This document shows positions 9,601 through 61,167 of a stretch of 64,000 bases of DNA, piece by piece. The position numbers and the translations under genes were made by a program. Every line of letters begins with the position of its first letter. Within the stretch, counting starts at the first letter, position 1. The stretch comes from Zygnema circumcarinatum SAG 698-1b (Eukaryota > Plantae > Zygnematophyceae). Below the pieces are notes generated by a model. That model was not told the DNA's origin, searched no databases, and saw only the letters and a program-made list of their open reading frames with translations. The stretch covers positions 3,090,689 through 3,154,688 of the forward strand of contig CM074809.1 of NCBI GenBank assembly GCA_037447605.1, read 5' to 3'.

Positions 9601-10208
9601 CCGCCCTTCTCCGCATCCATCCGAACCAGTTCATCGCGCACAGTGCTGACAGTCCCATCCGCCGCCACGAGTAGGTCATAGCCCTGCAGGTCCATGCGGT
9701 CTTCAGGACCCTCCTTCAGATCTCTCATTCCAGCCACCAGCCTCTGCTCAGTCTCCTCGGTTCGACTTCTTGTTCTTCGAAACCGTGCAACCTCCCCTTC
9801 ATCCTCCAAAGCATAGAGAGTCCAGCCCATATGAACCCTAATTCTGCTCGACTTATGATTCTGCGCTTCCTGAAGCAGAAAATTTGCAAGTTCATTCCTT
9901 CCCACTGCCGACTTTGGCTGAGAGGCATCAAATGCCTGAAAATTCTTCGTTCCGCCACCATGTACGCTGAAGCCCTTGAGAGGAAGCGCCAAATCTGGAG
10001 GCAGCTCAAGGCCTGCTTGTCTGAGCGCCTTTAAAGCCCGAATATTCAGCACATATACAGGCGTTTTCTTTTCGCTGAGAATAGAAAAGTCTGGAATCCG
10101 TTCTACCAAGTCGACACGAAACCCGCGATTTGCGAGAAAGATCGACATAAGCGATCCTGCCGGACCCGCACCCACCACCACGGCTGAAGGGCTGTTCTGT
10201 TGATCCAT
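6681..10208 (-). CDS. FAD-dependent monooxygenase, kynurenine 3-monooxygenase-like, with C-terminal membrane anchor
   Basis: Contains the Rossmann motif VVVGAGPAG, YDLLVAADG, and VVLIGDAAHSLPGTFGEGCNAALEDC. The exon ending ...VPSW(gg) near 8190 splices in phase to a terminal exon at 6681-6849 (PKQIDIDSDTSY...AVVVFSGGVLCTGMIVLAAFHLWKHSRKAT*). Confidence 0.85.
8035..8150. repeat. Purine-rich 12-bp tandem repeat (GGGAGAGGGGAA)n in an intron
   Basis: About 6-8 copies read directly; it explains the GEGK/PSPL ORFs in the track. Confidence 0.8.
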
Positions 10209-17300: not shown

Positions 17301-18787
17301 CATCACACCTGCCTGTGCATGGCCGGTCTCTAGTCCTGCATCTAGTTTTTGCCAGAGTAGTCTTGAAAGGGGGAAATAGATACAGTTGTAACACTGAATA
17401 TCACAGGCATAATGGAGCTGTATACAATGTTAGGAACTAATATGCTTTCATGGAGGCTCCATGGGGCAGATGACCAGTATCTTGTCCACTACACGTTACA
17501 AGAAAGTTAAAAGTACTGTACCTTATCCGTGATTGTGAAAGCTGTTTCCTGACGTTATCGGTTGCTTGCTTCTTTCTTCTGTTGTCTGTGCAGTAGTTTA
17601 GTGCGGCAAATAATCGCAAAGCTCGGGGCCGCCCCCCGGCAGCGACTCGTCACGAATGCGAAGTATGCCGTCACCGGATTGGCCCTCCGACATCGCGGCG
17701 AGCCGGGTGGGTAGGGGGAGCATGCCAAGGGTTGGTTTAAGGGTTGGTTTAAGGGTTGGTTTAATGGCTGGTTTAAGGGTTGGTTTAAGGATTGGTTTAA
17801 GGGTTGGTTTAAGGGTTGGTTTAAGGGTTGGTTTAAGGGTTGGTTTAAGGATTGGTTTAAGGGTTGGTTTAAGGGTTGGTTTAAGGGTTGGTTTAAGGGT
17901 TGGTTTAAGGGTTGGTTTAAGGGTTGGTTTAAAGAAAAGGAGCGGCAGAAGCAGGGGGGGGGGGAGTCATGCAACACATTGGAGGAGGGAGGGGAAAAGG
18001 CACCTTGAAGTCCGCACAGTTTATTCTTCACAAGTGGTGCACTATGAGAGACAAGTTTGATTGCGCCAGCTTCTGACTGTCTCTTTTCTAGAGTCTGATC
18101 ATATTGCTATTCAAGCACTTGTTGTAGGAGTTGCATGGTTTCAGGTTCGACATATCAACACGAAAGTTCCTTGACGAACAAGCTAGAGACTAGAACCTCT
18201 ACGCAGAAGGAGACCAATGCCACTGGGAGTTGTTTAGAACTGTGTCTGGAAACTGTGTTGATACTTCGAATCGCATTTGTTGAACAAAGCGTTTGGTCGC
18301 TATGAGGGCTGCAGACTTGTGGAGACAAGGAGTGGTGGCGATGGTGCGGGCCAACTTTGATTGCATGCACCTCTTGCTCCGCCTTGGTGAGTTTCCTTTT
18401 GGAGTCACAATAGTTCTGCTCACACCGGACACAGAGATAGGGGAAAGTCATCAAGCAAGGGCTGTCGGATCACCTCATTGTGAGCTGCAAGGGTGTTCAA
18501 AGTCCACGTGCTGCAGCTGTTCAGCCCATTGGTCACCTTCCCGCTCTTCTCTTCTTCTTCTTCTTCCTTCCTGCTCTTTCTTCTTCCCTCTCCTTCTCTC
18601 TTCATCTTTGTAATGTGTGCATGCACCATGTGATGCAGAGGTGTGGAAGCTGATGTATCAGCTGCGACTAGCATGGGAAGCAGTCACAGAAACAGTGCTG
18701 TCCACCGGCAGGATACTTCTGTTTTGGTGGGCGCCTGCAGGCAGCTCCTCTAGTAAACCGGGCAAGCCCGCTTTGGCCGGCCTATGA
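11385..18787 (+). CDS. ABC1/UbiB (AarF/ADCK1-like) atypical kinase, probably organelle-targeted
   Basis: Exons encode GIYIKAGQF...[22 protein letters not shown]...VAVK|[37 protein letters not shown] and VLLDHGLY. The last exon ends ...GKPALAGL* at 18787. The N-terminus is Arg/Ala/Leu-rich like a presequence. Confidence 0.92.
17727..17932. repeat. Intronic minisatellite (AAGGGTTGGTTT)n, about 17 copies
   Basis: Near-perfect 12-bp tandem array starting about 20 nt after a splice donor (near 17707) of the ABC1 kinase gene. Confidence 0.92.
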
Positions 18788-42746: not shown

Positions 42747-43182
42747 AGTCAAAAGCAGCCTTTGACCCCTTCGCGCCTTCTTGAGCGAAGCAGAAGACGT
42801 GGCTCTCGCCAGTGCGCACCCTCCGAAGCAGGCCATGCCGGGGAGAGGGAGGGAGGGGACGCGGCATGGCGGGGCATGGCGGAGGCTCCTGCCGTGGCTC
42901 GCTGTATATCCCTTCTGAGGAATCTCGAGCGAGGAACCGTGGGAAAGCAGAAGCTTAGAGCAGTTGCAAGCAAGATGTTTGCACGCGCAGACTCGCAGGG
43001 CTTTTCGAGGTTAAGCACGCTTTGCATTTCGCATACGAGTGGTTGGATGACTAGCTGGACATTTCATCGGGGAAACGTGTCAGGTGCAACGTTCAGCATG
43101 CAGGAATGCCGCTGCACCCTGGGAAGCCTATGCAGTCAGGCTTTGACCCCTGCGTTGACCTTCCCGTTGGAGGAAATTATAA
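42747..43182 (+). promoter_or_regulatory. Promoter of poly-Arg precursor gene: four W-boxes, ABRE-like cores and a TATA box
   Basis: AGTCAA at 42747, TTGACC at 42762, 43143 and 43155; GACGTGGC near 42796; AACGTGTC near 43073; TATAA at 43178-43182, about 119 nt before the ATG. Confidence 0.55.
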
Positions 43183-43296
43183 GACGGGGGGGGTGGGAGA
43201 GAGGACGGTGGAGGGGGGCGCCTTGGGAGGCCAATCCCTGTCCCTTTCCTTGGAAGGCGGGTTTGGTTCTGAAGGGAGAGAGGAACGGACTCGAAA

Positions 43297-43732
43297 ATGG
43301 CGAAGGGGAGGAGGTCCACAACTCTGAGAGGGCTTGCAGTGTTAGGGTTTTTGTTTGTATGGGGCGGATGGCTGGCTTCTGCACGTGTGAATCCTGATGC
43401 TGACAACAGCGGCCATGTGGCTGTGCTTGATGCGAAGCCGAGTGACGGCCACGGCGGGGTCGATGCTGCTGTGAGCAAAGCTGATGCCAAGGAGCGGCGA
43501 GATGAAGGCCATGGACTGAACGAGGCCAGCGATCAGCCACAAGGCGAGCAAGTGGACACATTATTTGGAGGTCGCGATCGCGGTTTCAGTCATGGTTACG
43601 GCGCTTACGGTCCTTGGCGCAGTCGTTTTGGGCGCAGTCCCCATAATGATGTGCAGGAAGTTGATGGGAGCATGCATTTGGATGACGACAGCAACATGTT
43701 AGATGACGTCGACATGGACCAAACTGAGCCTG

Positions 43733-43764
<32 letters not shown>

Positions 43765-44769
43765 TTCCGTCGCCGCCGTCGTCGTGATGCTGTGGAGGAT
43801 GATAAGGGTAAAGAGCTGGTGGACGAGAGCAGAGAAGAAAGTGATGTTGCCGGTGAGTTGGATGACGTTGCGAGTGACTGGGATGGAGTGGGGGACGCTG
43901 AGGATGAGCACATGGACCAAGAGGGAGGTGGGGGTCGCCGCCGCCGCCGTCGTCGTCGCCGCCGCCGCCGCCGCCGTGATGCTGTGGAAGATGGTGGGGG
44001 TAAGGAGCTGGTGGATGAGAGCAGAGAAGAAAGTGATGCTGCTAGTGAGTTGGATGATGTTGCGAGTGGATTTGATGGAGTGGGAGACGCTGAGGATGAG
44101 CACATGGACCAAGAGGGAGGTGGGGGTCGCCGCCGCCGCCGTCGTCGTCGCCGCCGCCGCCGCCGTGATGCTGTGGAGGATGGTGAGGGTAAGGAGCTGG
44201 TGGATGAGAGCAGAGAAGAAAGTGATGCTGCTAGTGAGTTGGATGATGTTGCGAGTGGATTTGATGGAGTGGGAGACGCTGAGGATGAGCACATGGACCA
44301 AGAGGGAGGTGGGGGTCGCCGCCGCCGCCGTCGTCGTCGCCGCCGCCGCCGCCGTGATGCTGTGGAGGATGGTGAGGGTAAAGAGCTGGTGGATGAGAGC
44401 AGAGAAGAAAGTGATGTTGCCGGTGAGTTGGATGACGTTGCGAGTGACTGGGATGGAGTGGGGGACGCTGAGGATGAGCACATGGACCAAGAGGGAGGTG
44501 GGGGTCGCCGCCGCAGCCGTCGTCGTCGCCGCCGCCGCCGCCGTGATGCTGTGGAGGATGGTGAGGGTAAGGAGCTGGTGGATGAGAGCAGAGAAGAAAG
44601 TGATGCTGCTAGTGAGTTGGATGATGTTGCGAGTGGATTTGATGGAGTGGGAGACGCTGAGGATGAGCACATGGACCAAGAGGGAGGTGGGGGTCGCCGC
44701 CGCCGCCGTCGTCGTCGCCGCCGCCGTCGCCGTGATGGAGTCGAGAGTGTGGATGGACGGAAGGACTAG
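43297..44769 (+). CDS. Secreted tandem-repeat precursor A: acidic spacers plus six poly-arginine cores; intronless
   Basis: 490-aa ORF with signal peptide MAKGRRSTTLRGLAVLGFLFVWGGWLASA. Five 63-64 aa units (189-192 bp) start at 43786, 43978, 44167, 44356 and 44545. Cores in order: R10FR6, R14, R13, R13, R3SR9, R13. The N-terminus is homologous to the gene at 51000-52553. Confidence 0.85.
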
Positions 44770-46416
44770 TCCTCTCCGCTCATCGGTTCTTGAGATCACA
44801 GGTTCGTTCTCTGGTTTTTGTAGTTTTGAGACAGGCAAATGAAGTCGTTTTAAAGTGGTCATTTTCAGAGTTCTTCTGTTATTCCTTTTTTGCCTCATCT
44901 AAATGACTTTCACCGAGTATGCATTGCACCGTCGATGGGAATTCTTTAGAGTTGTTCATAACGAGCTTCTGGCCTTAGGAGGGAAAGAGCAGGTGCTGTC
45001 GTACTGAGCATTCCCTCGTTTTGCTTTTGCAGGAGTTCAATGGCTTGTTCGAAAGGATTGGTGCATACAGCTCGATACCTGAAATCATCTGTACATAGGA
45101 GTTCATGATTTCTTAGGATTCCGTAGAAATGAGTTCCTACTTGCAGCAAACGGCAATCTCGGTAGGCATAGTTTTTTGTTTCTAGTTTTCTTTTGTTCGA
45201 GTTCCAGTGGTCTTGAAAGCAAGATGATAGACCTTTTTGTTCGCAGTAGCAGAAGTTTTGCAAGGGCTTTCGTTCATGGGGTCAATAGCTTTTGTTGTCC
45301 ACTGTTTCTATCTCGAATAAAGCCTACATTCTGCTGCTCTAAATTTCGTTCCGTTGTTGAAATCACTGTTTCTGCTTGCTGGAGTGTCCTTGTCAAGAGT
45401 GTGTAGAGACATTTTTATTGCTTTGGTTGTTGTACTGGCTTGAATTCGGATCAAGCGTTAGATTTTCTTTTTTTAGTACAGCTGGAAGCTTCTTGCATCA
45501 TTTCATAGCCCGTACACTATGTGTTAACAGACTCTTTGTGGTGGTGTTCTCCGTCATTTCATGCCTGCATTTCATCAACAGATCGCCCTTTCGTGCCTAG
45601 ATTTCCTCGACTGCAGGGATGTAGTCTAATGCCTTTTGATATCAAATGCAGTTTCCATGTTTGGCCAATTGGTCGAAGTAAACCGGCCGTTCAGAGCTCA
45701 GAAGTTGCGCTCCCCTCGAGTTTGCGTGATCCTTGTTGCACTCCCACGGATAAAAACCGTGGACGGGCAAAAAGGCAGAGGCTTCTTGGAAATTGGTTAA
45801 AAGAGCCATGCCCCACGCCAAAATATGACTTGATGAAAGAGGCCCTCCAATGGCAGTGACGCGCTTTCTTGACAGCCCTCCTTGTAATGCTCAAGCGCAC
45901 ATGGAGCTGACCCAATTTTTTGGGGACTGCTTAAAAGGGAAAGGAAATGTTGAGCAGGAAAGGGCCATCGGACACCTTCACAGCGCACGGGCTGAGCATT
46001 GCACTCAAAAATGCCACTGCGCGCCATTTTCATTCCGCTCGCTGCTAGGCCGGCGGGGCGATGGCAGGGGGGCGATTGATGGACGGCCCAAATCGCACAT
46101 GGCAACGCTGTGCGACCTCTGCCGTTCGATCCATCTTAGTATCGTGCACTATCGTGGAGGTACTCTGTTGGAGCGTCCGCTCGCGTCCGCTGAGATGGCG
46201 AACGGATGAGTACAACAACCCGCGATGGTGTACGATATCGCATCGATATTGTACCAATATTGTATTGGTGTGCTTAACCGGAACTGCTATTATTAGATTG
46301 TACGTATCGTATCGTATCGGAAAAGGCTCCCGATCATCCCCATCATTAGACACCCGTTTGACCAATTCCTCGTCATGCTCATTGTGTCCATGTACATGTG
46401 ATGGTATCACTTCCAT

Positions 46417-46472
46417 CGTGAGATCAGTGCCACTTCCATTCTTCAAAGGAGGGAAATGGCATTGATCTCACG
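46417..46472. repeat. 16-bp inverted repeat (hairpin), one mismatch
   Basis: CGTGAGATCAGTGCCA (46417-46432) versus TGGCATTGATCTCACG (46457-46472). Confidence 0.7.
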
Positions 46473-47265
46473 CATGGCGAGGCCATCAAATGTACATGGC
46501 CAAAAGTAGCATGGGGAACCACGACGAACTGGTCGCAAGGGACTTCAGCACACAAAAAAAAGCTATGAGCGGACTTGCATTCTTCCCGTTTGGTGATGGA
46601 AATGTTTGAAAAACCAAGCTCGCAAAACAAACAAGCCGTCGTCCAATAGAAGGTAAGCAAGCGAACAAGGAGGCAAAAGGCAAGGAGGGAGAGAGGGGGA
46701 GAGGGAGGAAGGGAGGCAGGCGCCAAACAGGAAGCAAGCGGCTAGTATTACAATTCGTCCGTACGTGTACGGTTTCGTTCGTACATGTCATATTTAGGGG
46801 GCAACCCGTTAAGGCGAAATCCCTTATTTGAAGAGGCCTGCTAATAGGCAACTAAAAAATCAGCTCCATTTGCTTCAAAAGAAGCTATGCATATCAATGA
46901 AGAGCAAGGACGCAAAAACATGAATTGCTTCCTTTTAAGCCCTTCTAGTTCTGAACCACTCTGCATTCAAACATGTACCAAGAAGCGTCCAACAATGACT
47001 CAGACGGATTCTAGTCGAACCAACTGCTTGAAAGATGGGGCTGAAATCCAATCAGGTTCTTAACACGGCATTCCAACTGCATGGGTGGGTAGCTGTGAGC
47101 AGTGAAAAATGCACTGTTACTCGCTCCCTGACATCGAAGATTCTTTCTAGTTCCCGGGAAGAATGTTCTGAAAGCTGAGCCTCAAAGCTGTTCAAGCAGG
47201 TCGTATTCTGTTAGAATTTATTTCTTTGCAAAAGTTTCCTTTCTGTACAAAACAAGTGCAGCCGC

Positions 47266-48039
47266 CTAGACACTGGCTTGGTAGCCCTTCTCCTCGAACC
47301 TTTCTTCACCGGACTTCTCCATTGTGGAATGACCACCCTTGCTCCGACCTGCAAGAGGTCTCCCATCTCCCACCCAAGCAATGAAGTCAAACTGACTTTT
47401 ATTGGAAAATGAAGCGAGGCAAATCTAGAACTCTTGACGATCTAGATTCAAATAAAGTATAACAGCAGCAGAACAACCGAAACGTTTCAATTTGTTTGCT
47501 TATTTTGTACGTGTTCCAAGTAGGGGAAGAAGCTAAACAAGAAGACGATAGCCTTTTCCACTCGCCAAAGAGTTGAAGTTATTGAACTGCACCTTCTGCA
47601 AGATGGATTTGGGCCTCGAGTGACTTGCCACCAGTGCCGCCCTTTACCACTGTTTCTCCGGACGCCACACGCTCCTCTAGCTCCTGCGGAAAACAAAAGG
47701 CAAAGAACTTCTAATGTTGCGTTTAGCGGACCTGTTTTATAGGTTGTTAGCACTCGTGCAGCCGGAGTTTACACGGTTTCGAGGCAATAACCAAAAAATT
47801 GAATCCCAGATCGTTATCACTGAAAAGACTCCCAATATATTAAAGCTGCTTCACCATGCTTGTAATATTATACTGAAAGAAATGAAAAGACGAAATAAGC
47901 ATACGGTATCAGACTCGAGCATCAACATAGTACTGCATGCCAGTATGTGGGAAAACCTTCACACCTTGCGCTTCTCTGGGTCCTTTGCCTGCTCCTTCAC
48001 CTCCTCAACAGACTGCAGAGTTTCTGTCATCTCAGCCAT
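47266..48039 (-). CDS. Em-like LEA group 1 (LEA_5) protein lacking the 20-mer repeat
   Basis: Exons 48039-47965 (75 nt), 47683-47593 (91 nt) and 47348-47266 give [82 protein letters not shown]. Confidence 0.88.
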
Positions 48040-48661
48040 GGCGTTCCTTCAACCAGAGAAAGCTATCTCCAACAACTGGCTGGTTTCTTTCTATTTTTCT
48101 TGCTAGCAGCTCTCTACTCCAACCTGCAAAGACCGAAACTGGAAAGCCTCAAAACTGGACATATCGCACTTCCAGTTACCCTTATTAACCTTCTGGCAGC
48201 TGTGAGGAAGCAGCTCTCGTCAGGCGCATGGCATGCAAGCGCAATCGAATGACGAAGCTTTCGCTCTTGCAGGAAGCAATTGGTTTAGGCGCTGCATGGG
48301 ATTGCTGACATGTCCATGCGCTACGCGGCCTCTGGGAAGTGCTTCTTTTCTTGCCACCTGGCCGGAGTCCCTATGGATGTACTGTATGCAAACAGGTTTG
48401 AACAGTTATAAGCATAGCGTACATGTCGAGGCGGGTTTTTAAAAAGCCTGGGCTTTCAAGAGCGTGGCAGATGTGCGAAGCTTTTAGCAACCTAATTGCT
48501 TACTGGGATGCGTCATCTTGGTCAAAAGTGAAGGCTACCAATCGTAAAGGCGAAGTGGATATCTTTCTGTTCACATTGCTGTTCTTCACCGGGTGAAGAT
48601 AACCCAACAGTATTCCTTTGCGGAGATAATGACAAGAGGCATTCTTGAAGCGAGTTTATCG
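48040..48661. promoter_or_regulatory. Divergent promoter between two Em genes, with RY motifs
   Basis: CATGCA at 48232, TGCATG at 48293, GCGTGGC near 48462, and GCCACCTGGC near 48352 (also present near 55845 upstream of another Em gene). Confidence 0.4.
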
Positions 48662-49782
48662 ATGGCTGCAGCTTTGAATGCCTGTAGCTATTTCACTAAC
48701 ACCGCTCGTTCAATAATTCCAAGAATAAATGCGTTTGTCTGCCCCCAAGTTGAACCTGCAGGAGTTCTCACCAGGTTTGCCTCAAAGAAAACCGATACCA
48801 CGGCCTTCCAGCATTCTGTGAATGAGGTGAAGGAGATGATGCAGGACCCGAAAGAGCTGAAGGTATGGGAATTCAGTGTTGCAACCAAGTTCAGACATAG
48901 TAACATAGAAAATCATGGACCATAGATACAAGCGCATGGCTTCGATAGTAAGAACAGCGACAAAATTTGAAGTATGTGAGAGTATGGCGGGGAGTAGCAC
49001 TTGATCAAATCAAGTAACGATTGAAATTTTGATTATGGCTGTAATTCAATCTAACACAATACTCGTTCGTCAATAAATCTTCGCTTATCCATTGACATTG
49101 TGTTACCGGCCCACTTTGGATTCTGCAGAACCTTGAGAAACTTGTGCAGGAAGGAAAGACGGTGGTGAAGGGTGGCACTGGCGGAAAGACGCTCGATGCA
49201 CAAATACGGCTGGCTGAAGGTGCTCCGCCTGCCCCTCACTCTCTGGTGTGTTTAACTTCGTGTGCACGAGTCTGGCTTTAAGTGACCTTGGGCTGATTAC
49301 CTTTCGCAATGGTTCCACAAACGAGTTATATCGTTTTGCAGCTGCAACCATTACTCATGCACGTCGGAATTTGAAGAGCAGCTCTGGACGTTCTTGTAAT
49401 CTTGACCTAGCGATACACAAGAATCACATTGCTTGATCAATGATTTTGCGACTGGGGAGTCTACTCTTGCCAGTGCAGCCAAGTCGTGTACGTTTGGTAA
49501 ATCGCAATTGTGTTTATCGAAACAACAAACAAAATTGTACATTTTAAAGTCCGTTGTGTTGAGCTGAGTTTGCTGAACATCAGAGAAGCGCTTCGATTGT
49601 GGGTAGGAAGAAGCCGGGGAGGCCATGCCCACTCGGAGTCTGGGTCTAAAGATTCAGAGGTTGGAAAGAAGGGAGGTGAGGCCCGTACAAAGGAGCTGGG
49701 GCCCGAAGGTTATGCAGACCTGGGGAAGAAGGGGGGGAAGGCTCGGGCGGACGAGCTCAATCCAGAAGATATTCAGAAATAG
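48662..49782 (+). CDS. Em-like LEA group 1 protein with N-terminal transit-peptide-like extension
   Basis: Exons 48662-48862, 49129-49219 (91 nt) and 49607-49782 give [103 protein letters not shown]...KKGGEARTKELGPEGYADLGKKGGKARADELNPEDIQK*. An alternative start exists at 48629. Confidence 0.82.
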
Positions 49783-50999
49783 GGAAGAAGAGAGGCTGCG
49801 CTAGAGGAGTTGGATCCGAATAATATTCGGGAACGGGGAAGGAATGAGGACATCCAGGCACAGGATCGTCGTGTGCTTGGACGAAAGAGAAAGAGGAGAG
49901 GCAGGAAGTGACAGATCTTAGGCACACAGAGGGGCAGAGATTACAATGCAGGTCTGATAAGGCAACGCAGACCAAGAATTGAAATACTGCTCGAGGGCTT
50001 CCGAGTGGTTGAAGGCGTCATTCGTTCGTTAGAAATTTCAAACAGCAAATGCAGGTTTACGACAGTACAATGTCTCCAATTCCAAACCAAAGCATTTGGT
50101 AAGAAAATGGAAGAAAGACAAGGTTTCAAAGTGGACAGTTTGAAAAAAAGAAAAGGTTGATGGAAAGGACGATGTCTCCCTCACTGCGCTGCTCCATTGT
50201 CAGCGGCACATGCTGATTGAAAAGACTGGAAAAAAATTCTACTTCCTTGCAATGCACCAAAATCACGATAATGATCTGCTATGTCTGACCAATTGAAAAG
50301 ACAGCATCTATATGGCAATGAGTGAAGAGTATGGTGCTGAGTGGATTTTAACAAAGAGTTGGCATAAATATTCATGCGACAATCTTCTGACTAACTTTCG
50401 TTCTTTCAGAAAAAAAAGTGTGATTTTGAGTGATGAGCAGTGTACATTAGGGGAGGAGAAAGGGAACATTTTATTTCGAGTAGCCAACAGATAGACAAAT
50501 TCTTGTTCCAAAAACTAATATCCGGCATAGACTAATATGTCTGCATGCTAGCCCCCACATCAAAATGGCTAGAGCAGAAATTAGGAATGAGGAAATCCTA
50601 TCGATTAAAAAGGTTACAGCCACAAAAAAGCTTCACTACTACTGACTTTTATCCACTTAAACGACGCTCACCTAAAGCCTAAACTCTTTCAACTTCGAGC
50701 ATCCATTCCTGCAAGCAGAATTACAAGCTCAACTCAGTAAGGCAAGAAACACCGGAATGGACGGACCTCAATATGACAACATGAGTAATTGACTATAGTA
50801 GATTATGGGAGCATTTCAACTCCTACAAACTTCAGGTCAGCTTTGGCAAGAACTGAAGTGCCTGCAAATAGAGGAATCACAACACAAGGTTTCACCTACA
50901 CCTATCAGAATATTCGACTCAACCATACTCAGGATAGGCATGTCTGGAACTTACCGTATTTCTTTACTGCTTAGGAAATCCCTTCTCAATCTTCTCCAG

Positions 51000-52553
51000 T
51001 CAAGGCAGACTTGTGTTTCGAACACTATCCTCTATGTCATTACGGGAATACTTTCCCTTCTTGTACTTCTTCGACTTCTTGCCATCATCCAGCTCCTGGC
51101 TCTCATCTTCCAGCCCTTCGCTGTCCTCGCCTTCTACGCTATTCTCCACCTCCGTATTGTCACGAGGGTACTTCTTTCCCTTCTTGTGCTTCTTCGACTT
51201 CTTGCCATCATCCAGCTCCTGGCTCTCATCTTCCAGCCCTTCGCTGTCCTCGCCTTCTACGCTATTCTCCACCTCCGTATTGTCACGAGGGTACTTCTTT
51301 CCCTTCTTGGACTTCTTCCACTTCTTGCCATCATCCAGCTCCTGGCTCTCATCTTCCAGCCCTTCGCTGTCCTCGCCTTCTACGCTATTCTCCACCTCCG
51401 TATTGTCACGAGGGTACTTCTTTCCCTTCTTGTGCTTCTTCGACTTCTTGCCATCATCCAGCTCCTGGCTCTCATCTTCCAGCCCTTCGCTGTCCTCGCC
51501 TTCTACGCTATTCTCCACCTCCGTATTGTCACGAGGGTACTTCTTTCCCTTCTTGGACTTCTTCCACTTCTTGCCATCATCCAGCTCCTGGCTCTCATCT
51601 TCCAGCCCTTCGCTGTCCTCGCCTTCTACGCTATTCTCCACCTCCGTATTGTCACGAGGGTACTTCTTTCCCTTCTTGGACTTCTTCCACTTCTTGCCAT
51701 CATCCAGCTCCTGGCTCTCATCTTCCAGCCCTTCGCTGTCCTCGCCTTCTACGCTATTCTCCACCTCCGTATTGTCACGAGGGTACTTCTTTCCCTTCTT
51801 GTGCTTCTTCGACTTCTTGCCATCATCCAGCTCCTGGCTCTCATCTTCCAGCCCTTCGCTGTCCTCGCCTTCTACGCTATTCTCCACCTCCGTATTGTCA
51901 CGAGGGTACTTCTTTCCCTTCTTGGACTTCTTCCACTTCTTGCCATCATCCAGCTCCTGGCTCTCATCTTCCAGCCCTTCGCTGTCCTCGCCTTCTACGC
52001 TATTCTCCACCTCCGTATTGTCACGAGGGTACTTCTTTCCCTTCTTGGACTTCTTCCACTTCTTGCCATCATCCAGCTCCTGGCTCTCATCTTCCAGCCC
52101 TTCGCTGTCCTCGCCTTCTACGCTATTCTCCACCTCCGTATTGTCACGAGGGTACTTCTTTCCCTTCTTGGACTTCTTCCACTTCTTGCCATCATCCAGC
52201 TCCTGGCTCTCATTTTCCAGCCCTTCGCTGTCCTCGCCTTCTACGCTATTCTCCACCTCCGTATTGTCACGAGGGTACTTCTTTCCCTTCTTGTACTTCT
52301 TCCACTTCTTGCCATCATCCAGCTCCTGGCTCTCATCTCCCAAGCCCTTCTGGTCGACCTCCGCAACGTCCAAAGTGCTCTTGCCAGCATCCGCAGCAAC
52401 ATCGAGCCCAACCGTTGCATCCAGGACAGCCGCGTGACCGCTGCCATCATCCGCGGGAGCCATGCGTGCGGAAGCCAGCCATGTTCCCCACACTAGCGCA
52501 AACCCTAGTACTGCAAGCGCTCGTACAGCTGAGAAACTATTCACCTTTCCCAT
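51000..52553 (-). CDS. Secreted tandem-repeat precursor B: acidic spacers plus eleven Lys-rich cores; intronless
   Basis: Likely start MGKVNSFSAVRALAVLGFALVWGTWLASA at 52553. The 41-aa (123-bp) unit is GKKxKKxKKGKKYPR plus DNTEVENSVEGEDSEGLEDESQELDD. There are 11 cores, the last being GKKSKKYKKGKYSR. It is a paralogue of 43297-44769. Confidence 0.87.
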   Translation of the reverse strand: MGKVNSFSAVRALAVLGFALVWGTWLASARMAPADDGSGHAAVLDATVGLDVAADAGKSTLDVAEVDQKGLGDESQELDDGKKWKKYKKGKKYPRDNTEVENSVEGEDSEGLENESQELDDGKKWKKSKKGKKYPRDNTEVENSVEGEDSEGLEDESQELDDGKKWKKSKKGKKYPRDNTEVENSVEGEDSEGLEDESQELDDGKKWKKSKKGKKYPRDNTEVENSVEGEDSEGLEDESQELDDGKKSKKHKKGKKYPRDNTEVENSVEGEDSEGLEDESQELDDGKKWKKSKKGKKYPRDNTEVENSVEGEDSEGLEDESQELDDGKKWKKSKKGKKYPRDNTEVENSVEGEDSEGLEDESQELDDGKKSKKHKKGKKYPRDNTEVENSVEGEDSEGLEDESQELDDGKKWKKSKKGKKYPRDNTEVENSVEGEDSEGLEDESQELDDGKKSKKHKKGKKYPRDNTEVENSVEGEDSEGLEDESQELDDGKKSKKYKKGKYSRNDIEDSVRNTSLP

Positions 52554-52635
52554 TTGCACAGCTCCACTCTGTTGCTCCCAAACCTCTTGCAATCTCTGTG
52601 CCTGCTCTCTGGTTCACCGCTTTCCTCCCACGCAC

Positions 52636-52681
52636 TTTATACCTCGCCTTCCTCTCCATTGCCACAGTCAAAGTTTGACTG
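52636..52681 (-). promoter_or_regulatory. Promoter of Lys-rich precursor gene: TATA box plus palindromic double W-box
   Basis: TATAAA on the minus strand at 52641-52636. Perfect palindrome CAGTCAAA-G-TTTGACTG at 52665-52681 contains two TTGACT. A further TTGACC lies at 52983 and GACGTGGC near 53050. Confidence 0.58.
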
Positions 52682-54654
52682 CCATTTCCCAGACTTCCCC
52701 TCGCTTCCAGCTCCTCTCGTGTCCTCCAAACTCCGAGACCGTGTATGGCATTGCAGCTCTCCTGCCTGGCTTCCGAGGCCCTCCACATCATCAGTGTCCC
52801 TGTCGCCATGGATGTCATGCCGCTTATTTCGAGTGGGAATCACCAACGTTGGAAGGAATGGTCACCATCAGGCCGACCCTCCTGCCGCCATGTCGGGCCT
52901 TCCCCTCCCCTCCCTTGCCGCCATATGCCACCATAGAAGTTCTCAAAGTTTGGCAAGAGCTCAGACCGAGGGCGGGACGCCGTTGACCAGATTTAAAAAA
53001 AAAAAAAAAGACGGACCCAATCACAGATTGCCACGTAAGAACGTATGGCGACGTGGCATGCCGTGGTTGGTTCCGCTTCACAGGGCACCTTTGAATGGAA
53101 GAGTCTGAAGGCGCAGTATCATTGCACCGGATTTGCCCAGCTTCTCCCTCAGGCCAGAAATTGCTCTATCTATGAGCAACTATCTATCTATCTATTCTGT
53201 GCTTATGCTCCGCTTCTGACATACGGGTAATAGGCCTAGCCAATTTTGAGGATAGACAGCGTTTTTCATGTTATGCGACGACGAAAATGACAGCACATTC
53301 AATAACAACTCGCAGCTCGTTTTTTCTCCTTCCTTTCTCCCGCACACCTCTCTCTTTTCCTCTTTCTTTTCTATATCGCCATCCTCTCTTTCTCTCAACC
53401 AGCCTCGGCTCTCTGCCTTGGCAATAGAGAGACAGTAAGGAGAGGGAAGGGAGGGAGAAAATCATGAAAGGGGATAAAGGAAAGGGGAGAGAGAGGGCTA
53501 CTTTGGCGATAGACGGCAAGGAGAGCGGGGGATGAAACCATGAAGAGAGAGGAGAGAGATACAGATCAAGGAGACAGAAAGGGAGAGATGATTTGGTGAT
53601 AGAGAAACCACATAGATATAATGAGAGAAGACGAGAGAGAAAGGGGGAGGGGAAGGAAGAGAAAGAGAAAACGAGAGCTGAAAGGCAAATATTGCCTTGC
53701 TCGCTCTTCGAAAGGAGGTAACTTGTACTAGTCCCTGGTATTGTACTCGATGAAAAATGTACTCGCGGGTGCAAAGAAGTGCAGCCATTGGACTAATTAA
53801 GCTTGTAAGCAAGGTAGTACCCCCGTTTCACTTCCACAGAACAAAGAGAACACAAGGAACTGCAAAAGTTTATTGATTGAGAAACGCACGAGTCTACATC
53901 ACGTGCACTGCTGAGAGACCTTCCAACGACGGTCAACAGATTTGCTCTCTCGTTTATCAAGGTATCTGATTCGTTTCAAAACTACACGTGGGGCGGTGGA
54001 ATCCCCTGGATGGTGGACTGAAGATTTTCAGTATTATACACGTGGCATTACTTCGGAACGTGGTTCGGCGGCTGCTTGTCAAGTGCACTAATTTTTTATA
54101 ATGCAATCAAAACCTCACAGCGATGTCTCCATCCGGACTCCCTTTTCAGTTGCCGAACATGTTGGGAAGGCACATGGCCTCCCTTTTGTGCTCCGCGTTC
54201 TCAGAATGTGAAGCTTCTCAACTTCGAAGGCGCGGTTTGGCTCTCAATGATGGTCGCATAGACATTGCCAAACAGAGCTTCAAGTTGAAAGAAGATTAAG
54301 AGAGAAAGATAGGGAACTAGAAGCCACACAGGCAAAAACCAGAGGAACATGCTTGTACCTCAAATAGTCCAAACCAACCTGCATACTAAAAGGTGCCACC
54401 CAACGTGGTCAAGGCCTTGCAAAATCGAATACTCTCACACCGAAACAAAAAAATCCACACAGCACGGGAGAAGCGAAAATCCCGGTTATCCAAGTGAATT
54501 AAAGGTCTATCTTCATTCCCCTCGAGGGTGAAAAAAAAAAAATCTCAAAAACACTTCCTCTTCACAGCTTTGTACACAATGATACCGAAAGGCAGCTTCG
54601 CTACGCTCCTCGCGATACCAAGGCAAGCGCATGCAGGGCGCTACAATGCTCAGA

Positions 54655-55584
54655 TTAGGTATTCCTATATTTGGACTCGTCGATCTCAATGCCCTTCTCT
54701 GCAGCTGCTTCTCCGCCGGACTTATCGAGAGTGGAGAGGCCGCCCTTCCTCCCCATTTCCGCATACCCTTCCGAGCCCAACTCTTCAGCACGAGATTGGC
54801 CGCCTTTGCTTCGTCCTGCTAAGTACAAACGGGAAACAACACAGACAGTGGATCAAAGAACCGTCAAACAGATGAAAGAGTTGGAAATACTTTTCCAGCT
54901 TTAAGTGCCTACGGCAAAGTATAAACTGCGAATTATCTTTACGAGCGATGTTTTCGCAGTATGGCAGGATTAGCACGAAAGGACTAGCACATACAAGGCA
55001 AGAAGAGAAAACTAAATTGAAATCTTGACACTTGTGACTATTTCCCTATCATACCTTCGGCCAGGTGAACTTGAGCCTCGAGCGACTTTCCTCCAGTGCC
55101 ACCTTTCACGACCGTCTCACCCTCTTTTACCTTCTGCTCCAGTTCCTGGATAGCCACCAGACCATTTGAACGCAGAAAACGTAAGCACATACTTCCATAA
55201 TGGTTCACTCGGAAAAGTCACGGGGGTGAAAATACGCTTCAAACATAAGTAAGAAAAAGGACATTCGCAACACCGGGAAAGTGCCACAGACACGAAAAGG
55301 GTGCACACATGAGTCACTGCTTCTATCAAGAAGAAAGAAACATTAAAGACAGAAAAACTCGACCACACATACTTGAACACTAAAAAAAGCCCGTACATCG
55401 CAGAGTCTCACAAGGAACTGACAGTGCTCCCACACATAATTCTAGTAGTACACACGGTCCATGCAATTTGAAAAAAATCAGGCTGCATATCGCAAGATTC
55501 GTGCCAAACCTCGCGCTGCTCCTCATCCTTCATTTTCTCTTTGACCTCCTGCACAGCCTGCTCAGTTGCAGTCTTCTGCGCCAT
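54655..55584 (-). CDS. Em-like LEA group 1 (LEA_5) protein
   Basis: Exons 55584-55510, 55145-55055 and 54815-54655 give [108 protein letters not shown]. Confidence 0.93.
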
Positions 55585-55814
55585 CTCTCCCAAACCTCCT
55601 TGCAATTTCACCTCTTGCTCTAGCGGCTGAACGGACCTCTGAAAGAGAGAAGCGGAAAATATGACCTAAAACAAAGGAAAAAAACTACCAGGCTCTCCTT
55701 CCTTTTCCCTCCCCTTCTTTCTCTTCCTTCTTCCCCTTCCCTTCCCTTCCAGTAGTGGCCGAAACAGGACTGCATTCTGGAAACGGGTCTCAACAAAGAA
55801 AAAAAACGAGGCGC

Positions 55815-56033
55815 CATGCATTCCTGAGGTGCTGCCACGAGTCAGCCACCTGGCGCAATACAAGCACGTCGTGTCACCCGCTCTTGTCTGCACTCCGCGG
55901 CGCGGAGCCTGGCGGCCATGGCTGGAGGCTGCCAGAACAGAGCCTGCATGGCCCTTGCCACGCCTTGTGCCACGTGACCCAAGCCACACACCCTTACAAG
56001 CCTCCGACCGCCATGCCGCCTTGAGGACGTGGC
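55815..56033. promoter_or_regulatory. ABRE/G-box and RY motifs upstream of an Em gene
   Basis: CATGCA at 55815, TGCATG at 55945, CACGTG at 55971 and GACGTGGC near 56026. Confidence 0.5.
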
Positions 56034-57606
56034 GGGAAAGCAGTGGCCGACAGAGCTTCGCCGCCATGGCCGCCTCCACTGCTGCCAGGCGCCGCCGCGT
56101 AGCTTTACTGTTCTATGAGCTGCTGTAATACGAAACCGTACGGTATTACGGGATACATGCTCCCCGCAGTTTACACGGTAAAGACGATTTTTGCTGTGGG
56201 ATTCAACGGTTCTCAGTTGGTTCAACCGTTGGCTGCACCCAACCATTGGACTACCAATCATTGGAAAACAGTGGTCTGCCCAACGGTTGGTAATTTGTGC
56301 AATTTCCGTCCAGAGTGCCCAACTGCCCATCCCATTCTGTCCGTACAGCTACAACTCGCCGCCTCCTAACATTCCCAAACCCCAAACCCCATGTTTTAGT
56401 TTCCACTAGGAGCTGTGGGATCAATGTAGTCGACGATACCCTGCACATGGCAATGCATCAAAGGGAGCAATGTTTCGTTAAGTGGGTTAGAGAGGTAGGG
56501 AGCAGGGAAGGTTTGAGAAGAATGCCTCACCCCCATTGGACCGTCAAAGTGTGGCTCTTTGCTAGTGAAAAACCAAGTTTTATTCCACCAGGCTCTGTTT
56601 CAACCCAAAGTGAGTCGAAATTTTCTTAGTGTTTGAAGGGGTACTTGGCAGAAATAAAATTAGAAAAGACCCTCCTGCCTTCTCGTCTGAAACGATGTAA
56701 AGGGTCCTTCCATCTGGAATGTTTTTTGTATGCAATACCTCCAGTATGCTACAGAAGCTTGAAAGGATTGGGGTCAGGAGTTGGGAGGGAAGGGCAGAGT
56801 GGTAAGGGAGACGAAACAAGGGGAGACGAAACAAGGGTGCAGCAGGAGAGGGATGGAGCCGGAGGCCATTGGAGGAGGCTTGTAAGAAAAACGAAAGCGA
56901 GTTAAAAGAGGACAGAGAAAAGCAAGAAGAAGAAGAAGAGTCGCAGAGAATTCGATATCGCTCACGATTCGCTTTGGTTAGATCAAATCATCAGATTATT
57001 TTTGGAAAAGTTTACAAGTTTACAAGTTTCAGGATTCAATCTTCGCACTTTTGTCTGAATTCTTCGTTACTGAAAGCGACGGTCCTCGATCAGCAAGTCC
57101 ATTTGCTCAAAATGTCTCAATGAATGGACACATAATTCACGGTTAAAATTTGAGTGACTTCTTGAGAATAACAGTACGTAGTTGCACAAAAAAAGGCAAG
57201 GGACTGCCATCACAACTGAAGAGCAACTGAAGAACAACAGCATCTAACGCCTCAAAACACATTCACAACAAAACCAACTTAAAGAGGCATTTACGTAAAC
57301 GCAACCACTCTAAAAATGAGTATGTCCAAATATAGCATGAAGCAGCACAGCATGCTAAGTCTTTACGTTCTTAAAGCATCCAAACTCACATTATTATGTC
57401 GTTATGCACTTGAATTTTACAACATAAGAATCTCAAACTGGTTTCACGAGAAACAGACATGCCGTTCATATACGACTCTTATACCCCAAAATTGTGCCTG
57501 GAGAGACTGGACACATCTTGTCAATGTCCACTGGTGTCGCATAAAAATTCCTTTACTCTGTCACAACTTGCAAAGTGAAAGAAAGCAAAGCTCTACGCTG
57601 CCCATA

Positions 57607-58584
57607 TTAGACGTTCTTGTATTTGGACTCGTCGATTTCAATGCCCTTCTCTGCAGCAGCTTCAACACCTGACTTGTCCAGGGTCGAAAGGCCTCCCTTC
57701 ATCCCCATTTCAGAGTATCCTTCGTGGCCCAATTCTTCAGCACGAGCATGCCCACCCTTGGTACCGCCTTTGCTTCTTCCTGCAAGTTCATGTTTTACAC
57801 TGCAGTCAAGAACTTCCATTCATAATGCTTACGTTTTCTCATAGAAACCCAATTTTGAGAAAAGGTCCATACAATGCACTGCACTGCATTGCACTGGTCA
57901 TGCTTTCCCTCTCTGCAGCCATTCCCGACTCATCATGTAAAGTCAATTGAAGCCTGCTTTTCTGCAAGTGATCCAAAATTTTCCCGACAGTATTCAAATA
58001 GCTATCTCTGATGTTACTACGCACTTGACAGATGGAATTTCACAAAAACATATCTATCCTCTATGCGGCACATACCTTCTGCCAAGTGAACCTGAGCCTC
58101 TAAAGACTTTCCACCGGTGCCGCCCTTCACCACAGTTTCACCCTCGCGAACACGTTCCTCCAATTCCTATTTTCAGACAAAGCAACTTAGCTAACAAACG
58201 AAGCCTCCAAAATTGCAATTCCAAAAAACGGGAAAGGACATGCTACTTTACATCCGCAGTCTAAGCAATTGAATCCTATAGTTCTCAGACTCCTTTTGTA
58301 TGCAAGCCAGACCGTTCCTTTGCTACGCAAAATAAATTCATATCAAAAAACAGCTCTACATCAGAGGCAGACCGTAGTAGACCGTTTTGATCATAACAAG
58401 CGGTGAATGGAAAGCAATCATATTTTTATTGCAAATAATACCCTTCAGACGACATCGTCGCCAAAGGCAGCACTGCCATCAAAGGATCTCACATCTCATT
58501 GATAGGTACCTTTCGCTCCTCAGGGTCCTTCATAGCCTCTTTCACTTCCTCGACAGACTCCTGAGTCGCAGAGTTCTGAGACAT
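57607..58584 (-). CDS. Em-like LEA group 1 (LEA_5) protein
   Basis: Exons 58584-58510, 58166-58076 and 57779-57607 give [112 protein letters not shown]. Confidence 0.93.
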
Positions 58585-60954: not shown

Positions 60955-61071
60955 CCACGTGGCAGCAGCGCATCCGGCCATGTGGACCTTACAGATTCCA
61001 CGTGGAGCTCTATCGCGTCGCCACGTGGCACACGTATTAAAAACGGACGAGCGTCCTCTGCGCGACACGTG
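60955..61071 (+). promoter_or_regulatory. Cluster of four G-box/ABRE elements
   Basis: CACGTG at 60956, 60999, 61022 and 61066, three of them in CACGTGGC context; AT-rich TTTAAA near 61078; ATG at 61168. Confidence 0.65.
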
Positions 61072-61167
61072 GCAACATTTAAATGACGCGTCGCTCCAGT
61101 TTCAGGAGGGAGTGAGGGAGGGAGCAGAGAGAGAAGTGGGGGAAGGAAGTGAGCAGGAGGAGCAGCA

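What the first reader, a model, noticed from the sequence alone, without database searches (positions are those of the whole stretch)
43297..52553. Candidate new family of secreted multi-core polycationic peptide precursors (poly-Arg and Lys-rich paralogues)
Seen: two intronless, convergent genes share a signal/pro leader (LAVLGF..VWG.WLASAR...D..SGH.AVLDA). Their acidic spacers are related (EDGEGKELVDES...ELDD versus EGEDSEGLEDESQELDD), but their cationic cores are completely different: G4-R13/14 in A and GKKxKKxKKGKKYPR in B. In both, the spacer slightly over-neutralises the core (net about -4 to -5 per unit by count), and nearly every core ends at R-D. Established: a signal peptide plus repeated acidic spacer and cationic core is the architecture of processed peptide precursors such as magainin, apidaecin and fungal kexin-processed repeat proteins. 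Inference: the genes release many copies of a polycation. Possible roles are antimicrobial or cell-penetrating peptide, cross-linker of de-esterified pectin/mucilage, coacervate adhesive, or silaffin-like mineral template. I recognise no plant or algal family with this design.
Basis: partly seen in the sequence, partly recalled or inferred. Interest (0 to 1): 0.92.

Follow-up and report, generated by a model that had tools for sequence, protein, structure and literature searches.

The report
Secreted acid/base block-repeat protein pair
Two neighbouring, transcribed genes of a streptophyte alga encode export-tagged, unfolded proteins built of alternating strongly acidic and strongly basic blocks (one has six runs of 13-17 arginines), but nothing yet shows that they are cut into free polycations.

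Summary
The core observation holds. ORF A (43297-44769, +, 490 aa) and ORF B (52553-51000, -, 517 aa) share a 47-residue leader: 28/47 identical, E 7e-16, dS about 0.8-0.9, dN/dS 0.23-0.35. Each continues into near-identical tandem units of an acidic block and a polycationic block (R13-R17 x6 in A; GKKWKKSKKGKKYPR x11 in B), with net charge about -3 to -6 per unit.

RNA-derived contigs from four studies hold the genes; three runs of a fifth study hold neither. Two sub-claims fail. B is not intronless: it has a spliced GT-AG intron 45 nt after the stop. The spacer similarity between A and B is not above chance at protein level.

No Pfam family, sequence homologue or confident fold was found. 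This genome's own proteome is absent from the protein databases, so "orphan" is only weakly shown.

Both promoters carry a paired W-box next to a TATA-like box, and the genes sit among LEA_5 genes.

Best reading (about 0.4): charge-shielded pro-proteins that deliver polycations to the wall or medium. This design is already known from Ib-AMP, apidaecin and silaffin precursors. Main rival (about 0.3): the proteins act intact as secreted polyampholytes. Processing, secretion and translation are all untested. Other readers of this scan noted the same stretch.

The parts
43143..43160 (+). Gene A promoter: two direct W-box hexamers (TTGACC)
   Evidence: Only 4 close W-box pairs occur in the 64-kb window; two of them sit directly upstream of the TATA-like boxes of A and B.
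43179..43184 (+). Gene A TATA-like box (TATAAG), about 115 nt before the ATG
   Evidence: Sequence read. There is no ATG between it and the start codon.
43297..44769 (+). Gene A coding sequence, 490 aa plus stop
   Evidence: ATG is in a strong context (A at -3, G at +4). The stretch 43150-43760 is held completely by runs X1-X6.
43297..43386 (+). A: predicted signal peptide (aa 1-30: basic n-region, 15-residue hydrophobic core, A-S-A then R)
   Evidence: Kyte-Doolittle maximum 1.99 here against at most 0.27 elsewhere. AF2 helix at residues 9-27. SignalP was not available.
43387..43437 (+). A: conserved post-signal motif (R-x-x-P-x-x-D-x-SGH-x-AVLDA), shared with B
   Evidence: dN/dS is 0.23 over codons 11-46 with dS 0.94.
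43438..43734 (+). A: unique acidic N-terminal region containing a Gly/Tyr/Arg-rich island (aa 91-118)
   Evidence: No counterpart in B.
43735..44733 (+). A: array of six poly-Arg cores separated by five 50-aa acidic spacers
   Evidence: The CGC/CGT codon pattern is shared by units 2-6, so whole 189-bp units were duplicated.
44802..45032 (+). A: possible 3'UTR intron (AG|GTTCGT ... TTGCAG|G), 32 nt after the stop. Unverified.
   Evidence: Sequence only. Proposed by analogy with the verified intron of B; no reads were laid here.
51000..52553 (-). Gene B coding sequence, 517 aa plus stop
   Evidence: RNA contigs identical to the genome cover 51001-51095 and 52309-52600 and parts of the array.
52464..52553 (-). 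B: predicted signal peptide (aa 1-30, ending A-S-A then R)
   Evidence: Kyte-Doolittle maximum 2.07 here against at most -0.58 elsewhere. Aligned with A.
52413..52463 (-). B: conserved post-signal motif
51042..52313 (-). B: array of eleven Lys-rich cores separated by ten 26-aa acidic spacers
   Evidence: All Lys codons are AAG.
50709..50954 (-). B: verified 3'UTR intron (GT..AG on the minus strand), 45 nt after the stop
   Evidence: The joint is seen in X1, X12 and X10 at depths 35.6, 45 and 7.3. Splice sites were read.
50142..50708 (-). B: non-coding 3' exon (at least this far)
   Evidence: X1 contig 4 spans 50142-50707 joined to 50954-51095.
52636..52641 (-). Gene B TATA box (TATAAA), about 85 nt before the ATG
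   Evidence: Sequence read. There is no ATG between it and the start codon.
52666..52680 (.). Gene B promoter: inverted pair of W-box hexamers (AGTCAA...TTGACT)
47001..49779 (.). Context: two spliced genes lie between A and B. One is on the minus strand at 47001-48353 with three introns. One is on the plus strand from 48498, whose likely last exon at 49501-49779 is LEA_5-like.
   Evidence: Joints. Pfam LEA_5 E 2.4e-9 for 49501-49779, and a weak hit (E 0.009) for 47269-47424.
54658..57819 (-). Context: two further LEA_5 (Em-type) last exons, at 54658-54852 and 57610-57819
   Evidence: Pfam PF00477, 76.2 and 71.7 bits against a cut-off of 40.

Best explanation
A and B are old paralogues that encode secretory-pathway, cysteine-free, intrinsically disordered block polyampholytes. 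Each has a cleavable signal peptide, a conserved 17-residue pro-motif and tandem units. In each unit an acidic block of 26-50 residues slightly over-neutralises a basic block of 13-17 residues.

Most likely mechanism (inferred, not shown): the acidic blocks act as built-in charge shields. They let an otherwise sticky and toxic polycation be made, translocated and carried through ER and Golgi. Outside the cell, or in a vacuole, proteases that cut in the acidic blocks unmask or release the polycations. The cut sites would be after Asp or Asn, because enzymes that cut after Arg or Lys would shred the cores. The polycations then act by charge on polyanionic targets, either microbial envelopes or de-esterified pectin and mucilage.

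Only charge pattern, not core sequence, is conserved between the paralogues, which fits an electrostatic mode of action. Expression is conditional and probably stress- or defence-regulated.
For: Shown:
- The leaders are homologous and under purifying selection.
- Signal-peptide features are present.
- Both proteins have a fraction of charged residues of 0.51, net charge per residue of -0.06 and -0.09, and charge segregation kappa of 0.45-0.47 against 0.16 for shuffles. Neither has a cysteine.
- No fold is predicted: mean pLDDT 47.
- A is held by runs of studies P1, P2 and P3; B by runs of P1, P2 and P5. X1 (P1), X12 (P2) and X10 (P5) are shown to be RNA by their spliced joints, and X1 and X10 have zero depth over 48601-50000; the P3 runs that hold only A have no such check.
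- Runs X7-X9 hold neither gene, so expression is conditional.
- Each gene has a paired W-box within about 20-35 bp upstream of its TATA-like box. My arithmetic puts the chance of this in both promoters at about 4e-6.
- ABRE-like sites lie upstream of both genes, and the window holds 29 against 7.5 expected.
- The genes sit inside a LEA_5 cluster.

From the literature:
- Acidic propeptides separating basic mature peptides are established for Ib-AMP, and an acidic prodomain that neutralises toxicity is established for thionins (PMC10136942).
- Silaffin Sil1p is a processed Lys-rich repeat precursor (PMC4557024).
- Arg-dependent condensation of de-esterified pectin by cationic RALF peptides is established (PMC11240277).
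- The Atlas feature search put apidaecin precursors among its nearest look-alikes, but below threshold (0.69-0.74).
Against: - There is no peptide or protein evidence of any kind.
- No recognised processing motif (dibasic flanks outside the core, RXL, or a known subtilase site) bounds the cores.
- Variation among B units falls in the core (W/S, S/H/Y) as much as in the spacer. This differs from precursors whose mature peptide is the constrained part.
- Thirteen to seventeen consecutive Arg codons resemble the R12 reporter that stalls ribosomes, although a natural yeast protein with 14 Arg exists and natural polybasic proteins were not quality-control targets (PMC8102910, PMC5534433).
- RNA contigs run 230-400 nt upstream of B's ATG, past the TATA box, through several upstream ATGs. 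Part of the RNA may therefore be poorly translatable.
- No homologues are known, so conservation cannot argue for function.
Confidence: 0.4

Rival explanations
1. The proteins are not cleaved. They act intact as secreted, strongly charge-segregated polyampholytes. That would make them an extracellular counterpart of the neighbouring LEA hydrophilins, or a self-coacervating wall or mucilage matrix protein. Intra- and intermolecular block pairing would change with water content, pH or salt.
For: - Kappa is 0.45-0.47, the fraction of charged residues is 0.51, the proteins are nearly neutral, Gly is 10-14%, there is no Cys and no fold is predicted.
- The genes lie inside a LEA_5 cluster with abundant ABRE-like sites.
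- The whole 47-53 kb stretch is silent in X7 and active in the other runs.
- There are no recognisable cleavage motifs.
Against: - There is no match to any LEA or other Pfam family.
- The slight excess of acid over base per unit and the strict block order are what pro-peptide shielding predicts.
- Gene clustering is not evidence of shared function.
Confidence: 0.3
2. The acidic blocks are the products and the basic blocks are oversized convertase sites. Cleavage in the basic run, carboxypeptidase trimming and amidation of the exposed Gly would yield amidated acidic peptides.
For: - In both genes the acidic block ends in Gly directly followed by basic residues...QEGGGG-R13 in A and ...ELDD-G-KK in B.
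- A chlorophyte alga has prohormone-convertase-like subtilisins, carboxypeptidases and active PAM (PMC6313938, PMC6919629).
Against: - Two basic residues would suffice, so 13-17 are unexplained.
- By my own recollection, polyarginines inhibit furin-type convertases rather than serve as substrates.
- Whether this genome encodes PAM could not be tested from one window (one search found no note).
- The spacer similarity between paralogues is not significant.
Confidence: 0.08
3. They are nitrogen-rich storage proteins (20% Arg in A, 18% Lys in B). They would be routed through the ER to a vacuole during a dormancy programme together with the LEA genes, as seed storage proteins are.
For: Composition, a secretory leader with a conserved pro-motif that could be a sorting signal, and the LEA_5 neighbourhood.
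Against: - No known vacuolar sorting motif is shared by both proteins. A has VNPD where B has MAPA.
- Half of the residues are Asp, Glu and Gly, which makes a poor nitrogen store.
- No storage-protein fold is predicted.
Confidence: 0.07
4. They are young, fast-evolving repeat genes that are transcribed but yield little or no stable protein and have no selected function.
For: - No homologues were found.
- The arrays are 93-98% identical, so they are recent.
- All six frames are open across the arrays.
- Polybasic runs can stall ribosomes (PMC5534433).
- B has an intron 45 nt after its stop.
Against: - The leader has been kept by purifying selection across a duplication old enough for dS of about 0.8-0.9.
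- Both paralogues independently keep the same acid/base block pattern and the same promoter layout.
- Both have clean 5'UTRs downstream of the TATA boxes and strong ATG contexts.
- Codon choice avoids AAA, CGA and AGA.
Confidence: 0.1

Closest known systems
Ib-AMP polyprotein precursor of Impatiens balsamina (Tailor et al. 1997, as summarised in PMC10136942)
   Same: A signal peptide followed by several copies of a short, highly basic peptide, separated by acidic propeptides of 16-35 residues. It is a streptophyte protein.
   Different: Ib-AMPs are 20-residue peptides with four cysteines and two disulfides. A and B have no cysteine, their cores are near-homopolymeric, and there is no sequence similarity. 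Processing is proven for Ib-AMP and unknown here.
Silaffin precursor Sil1p of the diatom Cylindrotheca fusiformis (PMC4557024)
   Same: An algal protein with a signal peptide, an acidic region and tandem Lys-cluster units that are released as polycationic peptides acting by charge.
   Different: In Sil1p one acidic domain precedes a purely basic array, and units end in RRIL/RRNL (RXL) cleavage motifs. Here acid and base alternate in every unit and no RXL motif is present. Silaffins are Ser-rich and heavily modified. This alga is not known to silicify.
Apidaecin, magainin and yeast alpha-factor type multi-copy precursors, and fungal kexin-processed repeat proteins (own knowledge; apidaecin also appeared as a sub-threshold Atlas look-alike)
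   Same: A signal peptide plus tandem units of spacer and active peptide. Anionic spacers offset cationic peptides.
   Different: Those units are bounded by dibasic or dipeptidyl-peptidase sites, and the mature peptide has a specific conserved sequence. Here the basic residues are the core itself and its sequence is not conserved between paralogues.
LEA proteins and hydrophilins (the neighbouring LEA_5 genes)
   Same: Gly-rich, highly charged, disordered proteins with conditional expression at the same locus.
   Different: There is no LEA Pfam match. A and B carry a signal peptide. The block charge segregation and poly-Arg runs are not LEA features.
Cationic RALF peptides that condense de-esterified pectin (PMC11240277)
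   Same: Secreted and processed from a pro-protein; Arg-dependent electrostatic binding to wall polyanions.
   Different: RALFs are single-copy, Cys-containing folded peptides with receptors. There is no sequence relation.

Membership tests
Multi-copy cationic peptide precursor with acidic spacers (Ib-AMP type) | N-terminal signal peptide | tested here: met
   The N-terminus has a basic n-region, a 15-residue hydrophobic core and A-S-A before the predicted cut. It is the only hydrophobic segment and AF2 models a helix at residues 9-27. This is a rule-based reading; SignalP was not run.
Multi-copy cationic peptide precursor with acidic spacers (Ib-AMP type) | Tandem basic peptides separated by acidic propeptides | tested here: met
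   Six cores in A and eleven in B. Spacers are -12 to -19 and cores +8 to +16.
Multi-copy cationic peptide precursor with acidic spacers (Ib-AMP type) | Cysteine-stabilised mature peptides, or sequence homology to Ib-AMP | tested here: not met
   There are zero cysteines. No family or homologue hit was found.
Multi-copy cationic peptide precursor with acidic spacers (Ib-AMP type) | Proteolytic release of the peptides | not testable with these tools
   This needs peptidomics or tagged expression.
Silaffin precursors | RXL cleavage motif at the end of each repeat unit | tested here: not met
   Units end in R-D-A (A) or P-R-D-N (B). No R-x-L is present at unit ends.
Silaffin precursors | Lys clusters embedded in Ser-rich, phosphorylatable sequence | tested here: inconclusive
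   The B core has eight Lys in eleven residues but at most one Ser. A has Arg instead of Lys.
LEA / hydrophilin | Match to a LEA Pfam family | tested here: not met
   There is no LEA hit for A or B at E up to 1, while the neighbouring exons hit LEA_5.
LEA / hydrophilin | Gly above 6% and high hydrophilicity | tested here: met
   Gly is 13.7% and 9.9%. After the leader the maximum 15-residue Kyte-Doolittle mean is 0.27 in A and -0.58 in B.
Prohormone-type amidated peptide precursors (Chlamydomonas type) | Peptide-Gly followed by basic cleavage residues | tested here: met
   The sequences are ...EGGGG-R13 in A and ...ELDD-G-KK in B.
Prohormone-type amidated peptide precursors (Chlamydomonas type) | PAM, convertase and carboxypeptidase encoded in the genome | not testable with these tools
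   Only one 64-kb window is available, and the scan holds no note on it.
Extensins / HRGPs | Ser-Pro(3-5) repeats in the translated frame | tested here: not met
   The (CGC)n runs would read as Ser/Pro repeats only in another plus frame. That frame is not open and is not joined to the leader.

The most novel reading that the evidence does not exclude
A streptophyte alga makes natural oligo-arginine (G4R13) and oligo-lysine peptides. They would be released from charge-shielded secreted precursors under WRKY/ABA-type stress control, together with a LEA island. They would act either as broad polyanion binders that gel de-esterified pectin and mucilage during drying, or as cell-penetrating antimicrobials. 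This would be the first genetically encoded homopolymeric polyarginine effector. It might also be a substrate class for the ER-luminal lysine methyltransferase noted elsewhere in this genome.
Probability: 0.25. Interest if true: 0.85.

Novelty: new variant of a known kind. Interest (0 to 1): 0.6.

Why it matters
If the cores are released, this would be a natural, genetically encoded source of oligo-arginine, a molecule so far known mainly as a synthetic cell-penetrating and antimicrobial reagent. It would also show how a cell can translate, translocate and export such a polycation, using a slightly over-neutralising acidic partner block.

If the proteins stay intact, they would be a clean natural example of a secreted block polyampholyte encoded beside desiccation genes. 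That bears on how the closest algal relatives of land plants manage wall and mucilage hydration.

Either way the pair is a simple test system: two paralogues with the same charge pattern but different chemistry (Arg against Lys).

Tried and rejected
- Pfam on both proteins gave only sub-threshold noise.
- Rfam on the window found nothing.
- A word-indexed protein search with A residues 1-160 and with B residues 1-80 found nothing.
- An exact look-up found neither protein in the 15-billion collection.
- An exhaustive HMM search with the leader profile gave one hit, P0001. I rejected it because it is a 9-fold repeat protein whose score is summed over weak repeats, with no signal peptide and no basic blocks.
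- Two metagenome scans found nothing.
- A control showed that these blanks are weak. A conserved FAD-enzyme exon of this window finds no self hit, and its best relative is only 65% identical. The organism's proteome is therefore not in the databases.
- ESM Atlas scores were all below 0.8, so they are leads only.
- AF2 on A gave no fold.
- A full-text search for the core, spacer and leader strings found no papers.
- Homology of the 5' and 3' flanks between A and B is absent beyond the leader.
- A bacterial-type promoter and terminator scan was irrelevant and empty.
- I rejected the antisense and alternative-frame ORFs over the arrays, including a minus-strand ORF that also reads poly-Arg. They lack the conserved leader, and B's strand is fixed by its splice sites.
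- I rejected an extensin reading because the Ser/Pro frame is closed.
- Not done: SignalP (not available); laying reads on gene A (the single read-laying run went to 47001-53000); identifying the conditions of the expressing runs (metadata are coded).


Full report
**What is in the sequence**

The window is eukaryotic, with about 48% GC and few long ORFs. Earlier notes of this scan place it in a streptophyte alga.

Two long ORFs lie at the reported place. A is 43297-44769 on the plus strand, 490 aa. B is 52553-51000 on the minus strand, 517 aa from its first ATG; the TTG start listed by the ORF tool is an artefact.

Tandem Repeats Finder gives a 189-bp unit x5.2 at 93% identity in A and a 123-bp unit x10.6 at 98% identity in B.

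After about 145 unique residues, A has six Arg cores (R10FR6, R14, R13, R13, R3SR9, R13) separated by five 50-residue acidic spacers. After about 80 residues, B has eleven cores of the type GKKWKKSKKGKKYPR, or the variant GKKSKKHKKGKKYPR, separated by ten 26-residue acidic spacers.

The R-D junction follows 6/6 cores in A and 10/11 in B.

**The shared leader**

BLASTP aligns residues 1-47 of the two proteins with 28 identities, E 7e-16. tblastn finds no third copy in the window. DNA similarity begins at the ATG and ends near codon 47, and the flanks are unrelated.

Over codons 1-46, dS is 0.78 and dN/dS is 0.35. Over codons 11-46, dS is 0.94 and dN/dS is 0.23. The duplication is therefore old and the leader has been kept by selection. 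The arrays, at 93-98% identity, were expanded or homogenised much later.

The leader has the anatomy of a cleaved signal peptide. It has a basic n-region, a 15-residue hydrophobic core and A-S-A before the predicted cut. It is the only hydrophobic segment of either protein: Kyte-Doolittle about 2.0 against at most 0.27 elsewhere. AF2 models it as a helix at residues 9-27.

The motif that follows it (P-x-x-D-x-SGH-x-AVLDA) is equally conserved and unexplained. SignalP could not be run, so the signal peptide is a rule-based reading.

**Two sub-claims that do not hold**

First, the spacers are not demonstrably related. The best local protein alignment scores 37, and 908 of 5000 composition-preserving shuffles reach that score. 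At DNA level 45 of 2000 shuffles do.

Second, B is not intronless. Three runs show a joint that removes 50709-50954. Its ends read GT..AG on the minus strand and the sites are consensus, G|GTAAGT and TGCAG|G. The intron lies 45 nt after the stop, so the coding sequence is uninterrupted. The gene has a second, non-coding exon reaching at least 50142.

A has a similar-looking candidate intron at 44802-45032, 32 nt after its stop. I could not test it.

**Expression**

The 5' part of A is held completely by six runs, X1-X6, from studies P1, P2 and P3. The 5' part of B is held by seven runs, X1 and X10-X15, from studies P1, P2 and P5. Three runs of a 2017 study (X7-X9) hold neither.

X1, X12 and X10 were laid, and they are RNA-derived. 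They carry GT-AG joints of several genes, and X1 and X10 have zero depth over 48601-50000. X7 laid no contig at all on 47001-53000. Expression is therefore real and conditional.

Contigs match the genome without differences. No joint falls inside B's array, although array coverage is fragmentary, as expected for 31-mer assemblies of a 98% repeat.

One open point remains. Contigs run upstream of B's ATG to 52780-52955, beyond the TATA box at 52636-52641, through about ten upstream ATGs. Downstream of the TATA boxes both 5'UTRs are free of ATGs, and both start codons have A at -3 and G at +4. Contigs cannot say which start site dominates.

**Regulatory and genomic context**

Each gene has two W-box hexamers within about 20-35 bp upstream of its TATA-like box. 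They lie at 43143 and 43155 for A, and at 52666 and 52675 as an inverted pair for B. The window holds 68 such hexamers and only four close pairs. By my arithmetic the chance of such a pair in both 60-bp promoter segments is about 4e-6.

ABRE-like ACGTG[GT]C sites occur 29 times against 7.5 expected. They include 43075 and 42797 upstream of A, and 53030 and 53051 upstream of B.

LEA_5 (Em-type) exons lie at 49501-49779 (+), 54658-54852 (-) and 57610-57819 (-). A weak one lies at 47269-47424 (-).

**What the proteins are like**

After the leader both proteins have a fraction of charged residues of 0.51. Net charge per residue is -0.06 in A and -0.09 in B. The charge-segregation parameter kappa is 0.45-0.47, against 0.16 for shuffles with a maximum of 0.23. 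Gly is 10-14% and neither protein has a cysteine. AF2 gives mean pLDDT 47 with no domain.

Arg codons are only CGC and CGT, in a pattern shared by units 2-6. Lys codons are only AAG. Whole units were therefore duplicated, rather than triplets slipping, and the codons best known for stalling (CGA, and runs of AAA) are absent.

Among A's spacers, 6 of 12 variable codons are synonymous. In B the few differences fall mostly in the core. These numbers are too small to tell which part is constrained.

**Relatives**

None was found by Pfam, two word-indexed searches, an exact look-up, two metagenome scans or full-text search of the motifs.

The exhaustive profile search of 1.84 billion representatives gave one hit, P0001. 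It is a spurious repeat protein.

A control limits what this means. A conserved FAD-enzyme exon of the same window finds no self hit, and its best relative is 65% identical. This genome's proteins, and most proteins of its close relatives, are therefore not in the databases. "Orphan" is unproven. Atlas look-alikes are all below threshold.

**How it most likely works**

The following is shown: two transcribed, conditionally expressed paralogues; a signal-like leader under selection; a disordered block-polyampholyte body; and a common promoter layout.

The following is inferred. The acidic block shields the polycation during synthesis and transport. That role is documented for the acidic prodomain of thionins, and acidic propeptides separate the basic Ib-AMP peptides (PMC10136942). 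The shield is then removed outside the cell.

Arg- and Lys-specific enzymes would destroy the cores, so release would need enzymes that cut in the acidic part. That is a testable prediction, not a result.

The targets would be polyanions. Charge-dependent condensation of de-esterified pectin by cationic peptides is established for RALFs (PMC11240277). Polycationic repeat peptides released from an algal precursor are established for silaffins (PMC4557024).

I put this reading at about 0.4. The intact-polyampholyte reading is about 0.3. Amidated acidic peptides are about 0.08. These are suggested by Gly followed by basic residues at the end of both spacers, and by the convertase, carboxypeptidase and PAM system of Chlamydomonas (PMC6313938, PMC6919629). 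Nitrogen storage is about 0.07 and non-functional young genes about 0.1.

Runs of 13-17 Arg are at the extreme of natural proteins. Yeast's longest run is 14, and an R12 reporter stalls ribosomes, though natural polybasic proteins were not quality-control targets (PMC8102910, PMC5534433).

**Comparison and novelty**

The design of signal peptide plus alternating acidic spacer and cationic peptide is a known kind in plants (Ib-AMP), insects (apidaecin) and diatoms (silaffin). The claim that no plant or algal family has it is overstated.

Membership in any of those families fails on the tested features: no cysteines, no RXL motifs, no dibasic flanks outside the core, and no sequence similarity.

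Three things are unusual. The cores are near-homopolymeric Arg. One leader serves two chemically different polycations. The pair sits in a LEA_5 island with matched W-box promoters.

I rate it a new variant of a known kind, with interest 0.6.

Noticed in passing
window 24533-25094: A degenerate interstitial telomere-like array, (AACCCT)n, about 96 copies at 73% matches.
   Followed up: no
window 17727-17932: A clean 12-bp tandem array, AAGGGTTGGTTT x17 at 95% matches.
   Followed up: no
whole window, e.g. 60957-61073, 55969-56033, 53030-53057: ABRE-like ACGTG[GT]C occurs 29 times against 7.5 expected, and 0 of 100 shuffles reach this count. Tight clusters lie near the LEA_5 genes, including palindromic GCCACGTGGC sites.
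   Followed up: partly
window 47001-48353 (-) and 48498-49779 (+): Two spliced genes lie between A and B. The minus-strand gene has introns at about 47347-47590, 47683-47963 and 48122-48307 and a weak LEA_5-like last exon. The plus-strand gene has an intron at about 48861-49126 and probably ends in the LEA_5 exon at 49501-49779, which had zero depth in all four runs.
   Followed up: partly
window 52600-52955: RNA contigs extend 230-400 nt upstream of B's ATG, past its TATA box, through about ten upstream ATGs and a 93-aa overlapping ORF (52818-52537, -). This may be an alternative start site, read-through or an overlapping transcript.
   Followed up: partly
window 43605-44898 and 50805-52678: All six frames are open across both arrays. 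A minus-strand ORF over A's array also reads poly-Arg, and a plus frame reads Ala/Val runs. These are by-products of the repeats, not genes.
   Followed up: yes
window 9198-10334 (-) and 31707-32261 (+): A FAD-dependent monooxygenase-type exon (PF01494) and a WD40 exon lie here. The first was used as a database control; its best relative is 65% identical and comes from Logan assemblies of runs SRR8128905, SRR8128906 and SRR8128908.
   Followed up: partly
window 43567-43650 (A residues 91-118): A Gly/Tyr/Arg/Phe-rich basic island lies within the otherwise acidic unique region of A. It is absent from B and could be a separate peptide.
   Followed up: no
another piece of the same genome (notes s1-332352 and s1-343942): The scan notes an ER-luminal SET-domain lysine methyltransferase in this genome. 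The Lys clusters of protein B would be an obvious candidate substrate, by analogy with silaffin lysine methylation. This is pure conjecture.
   Followed up: no
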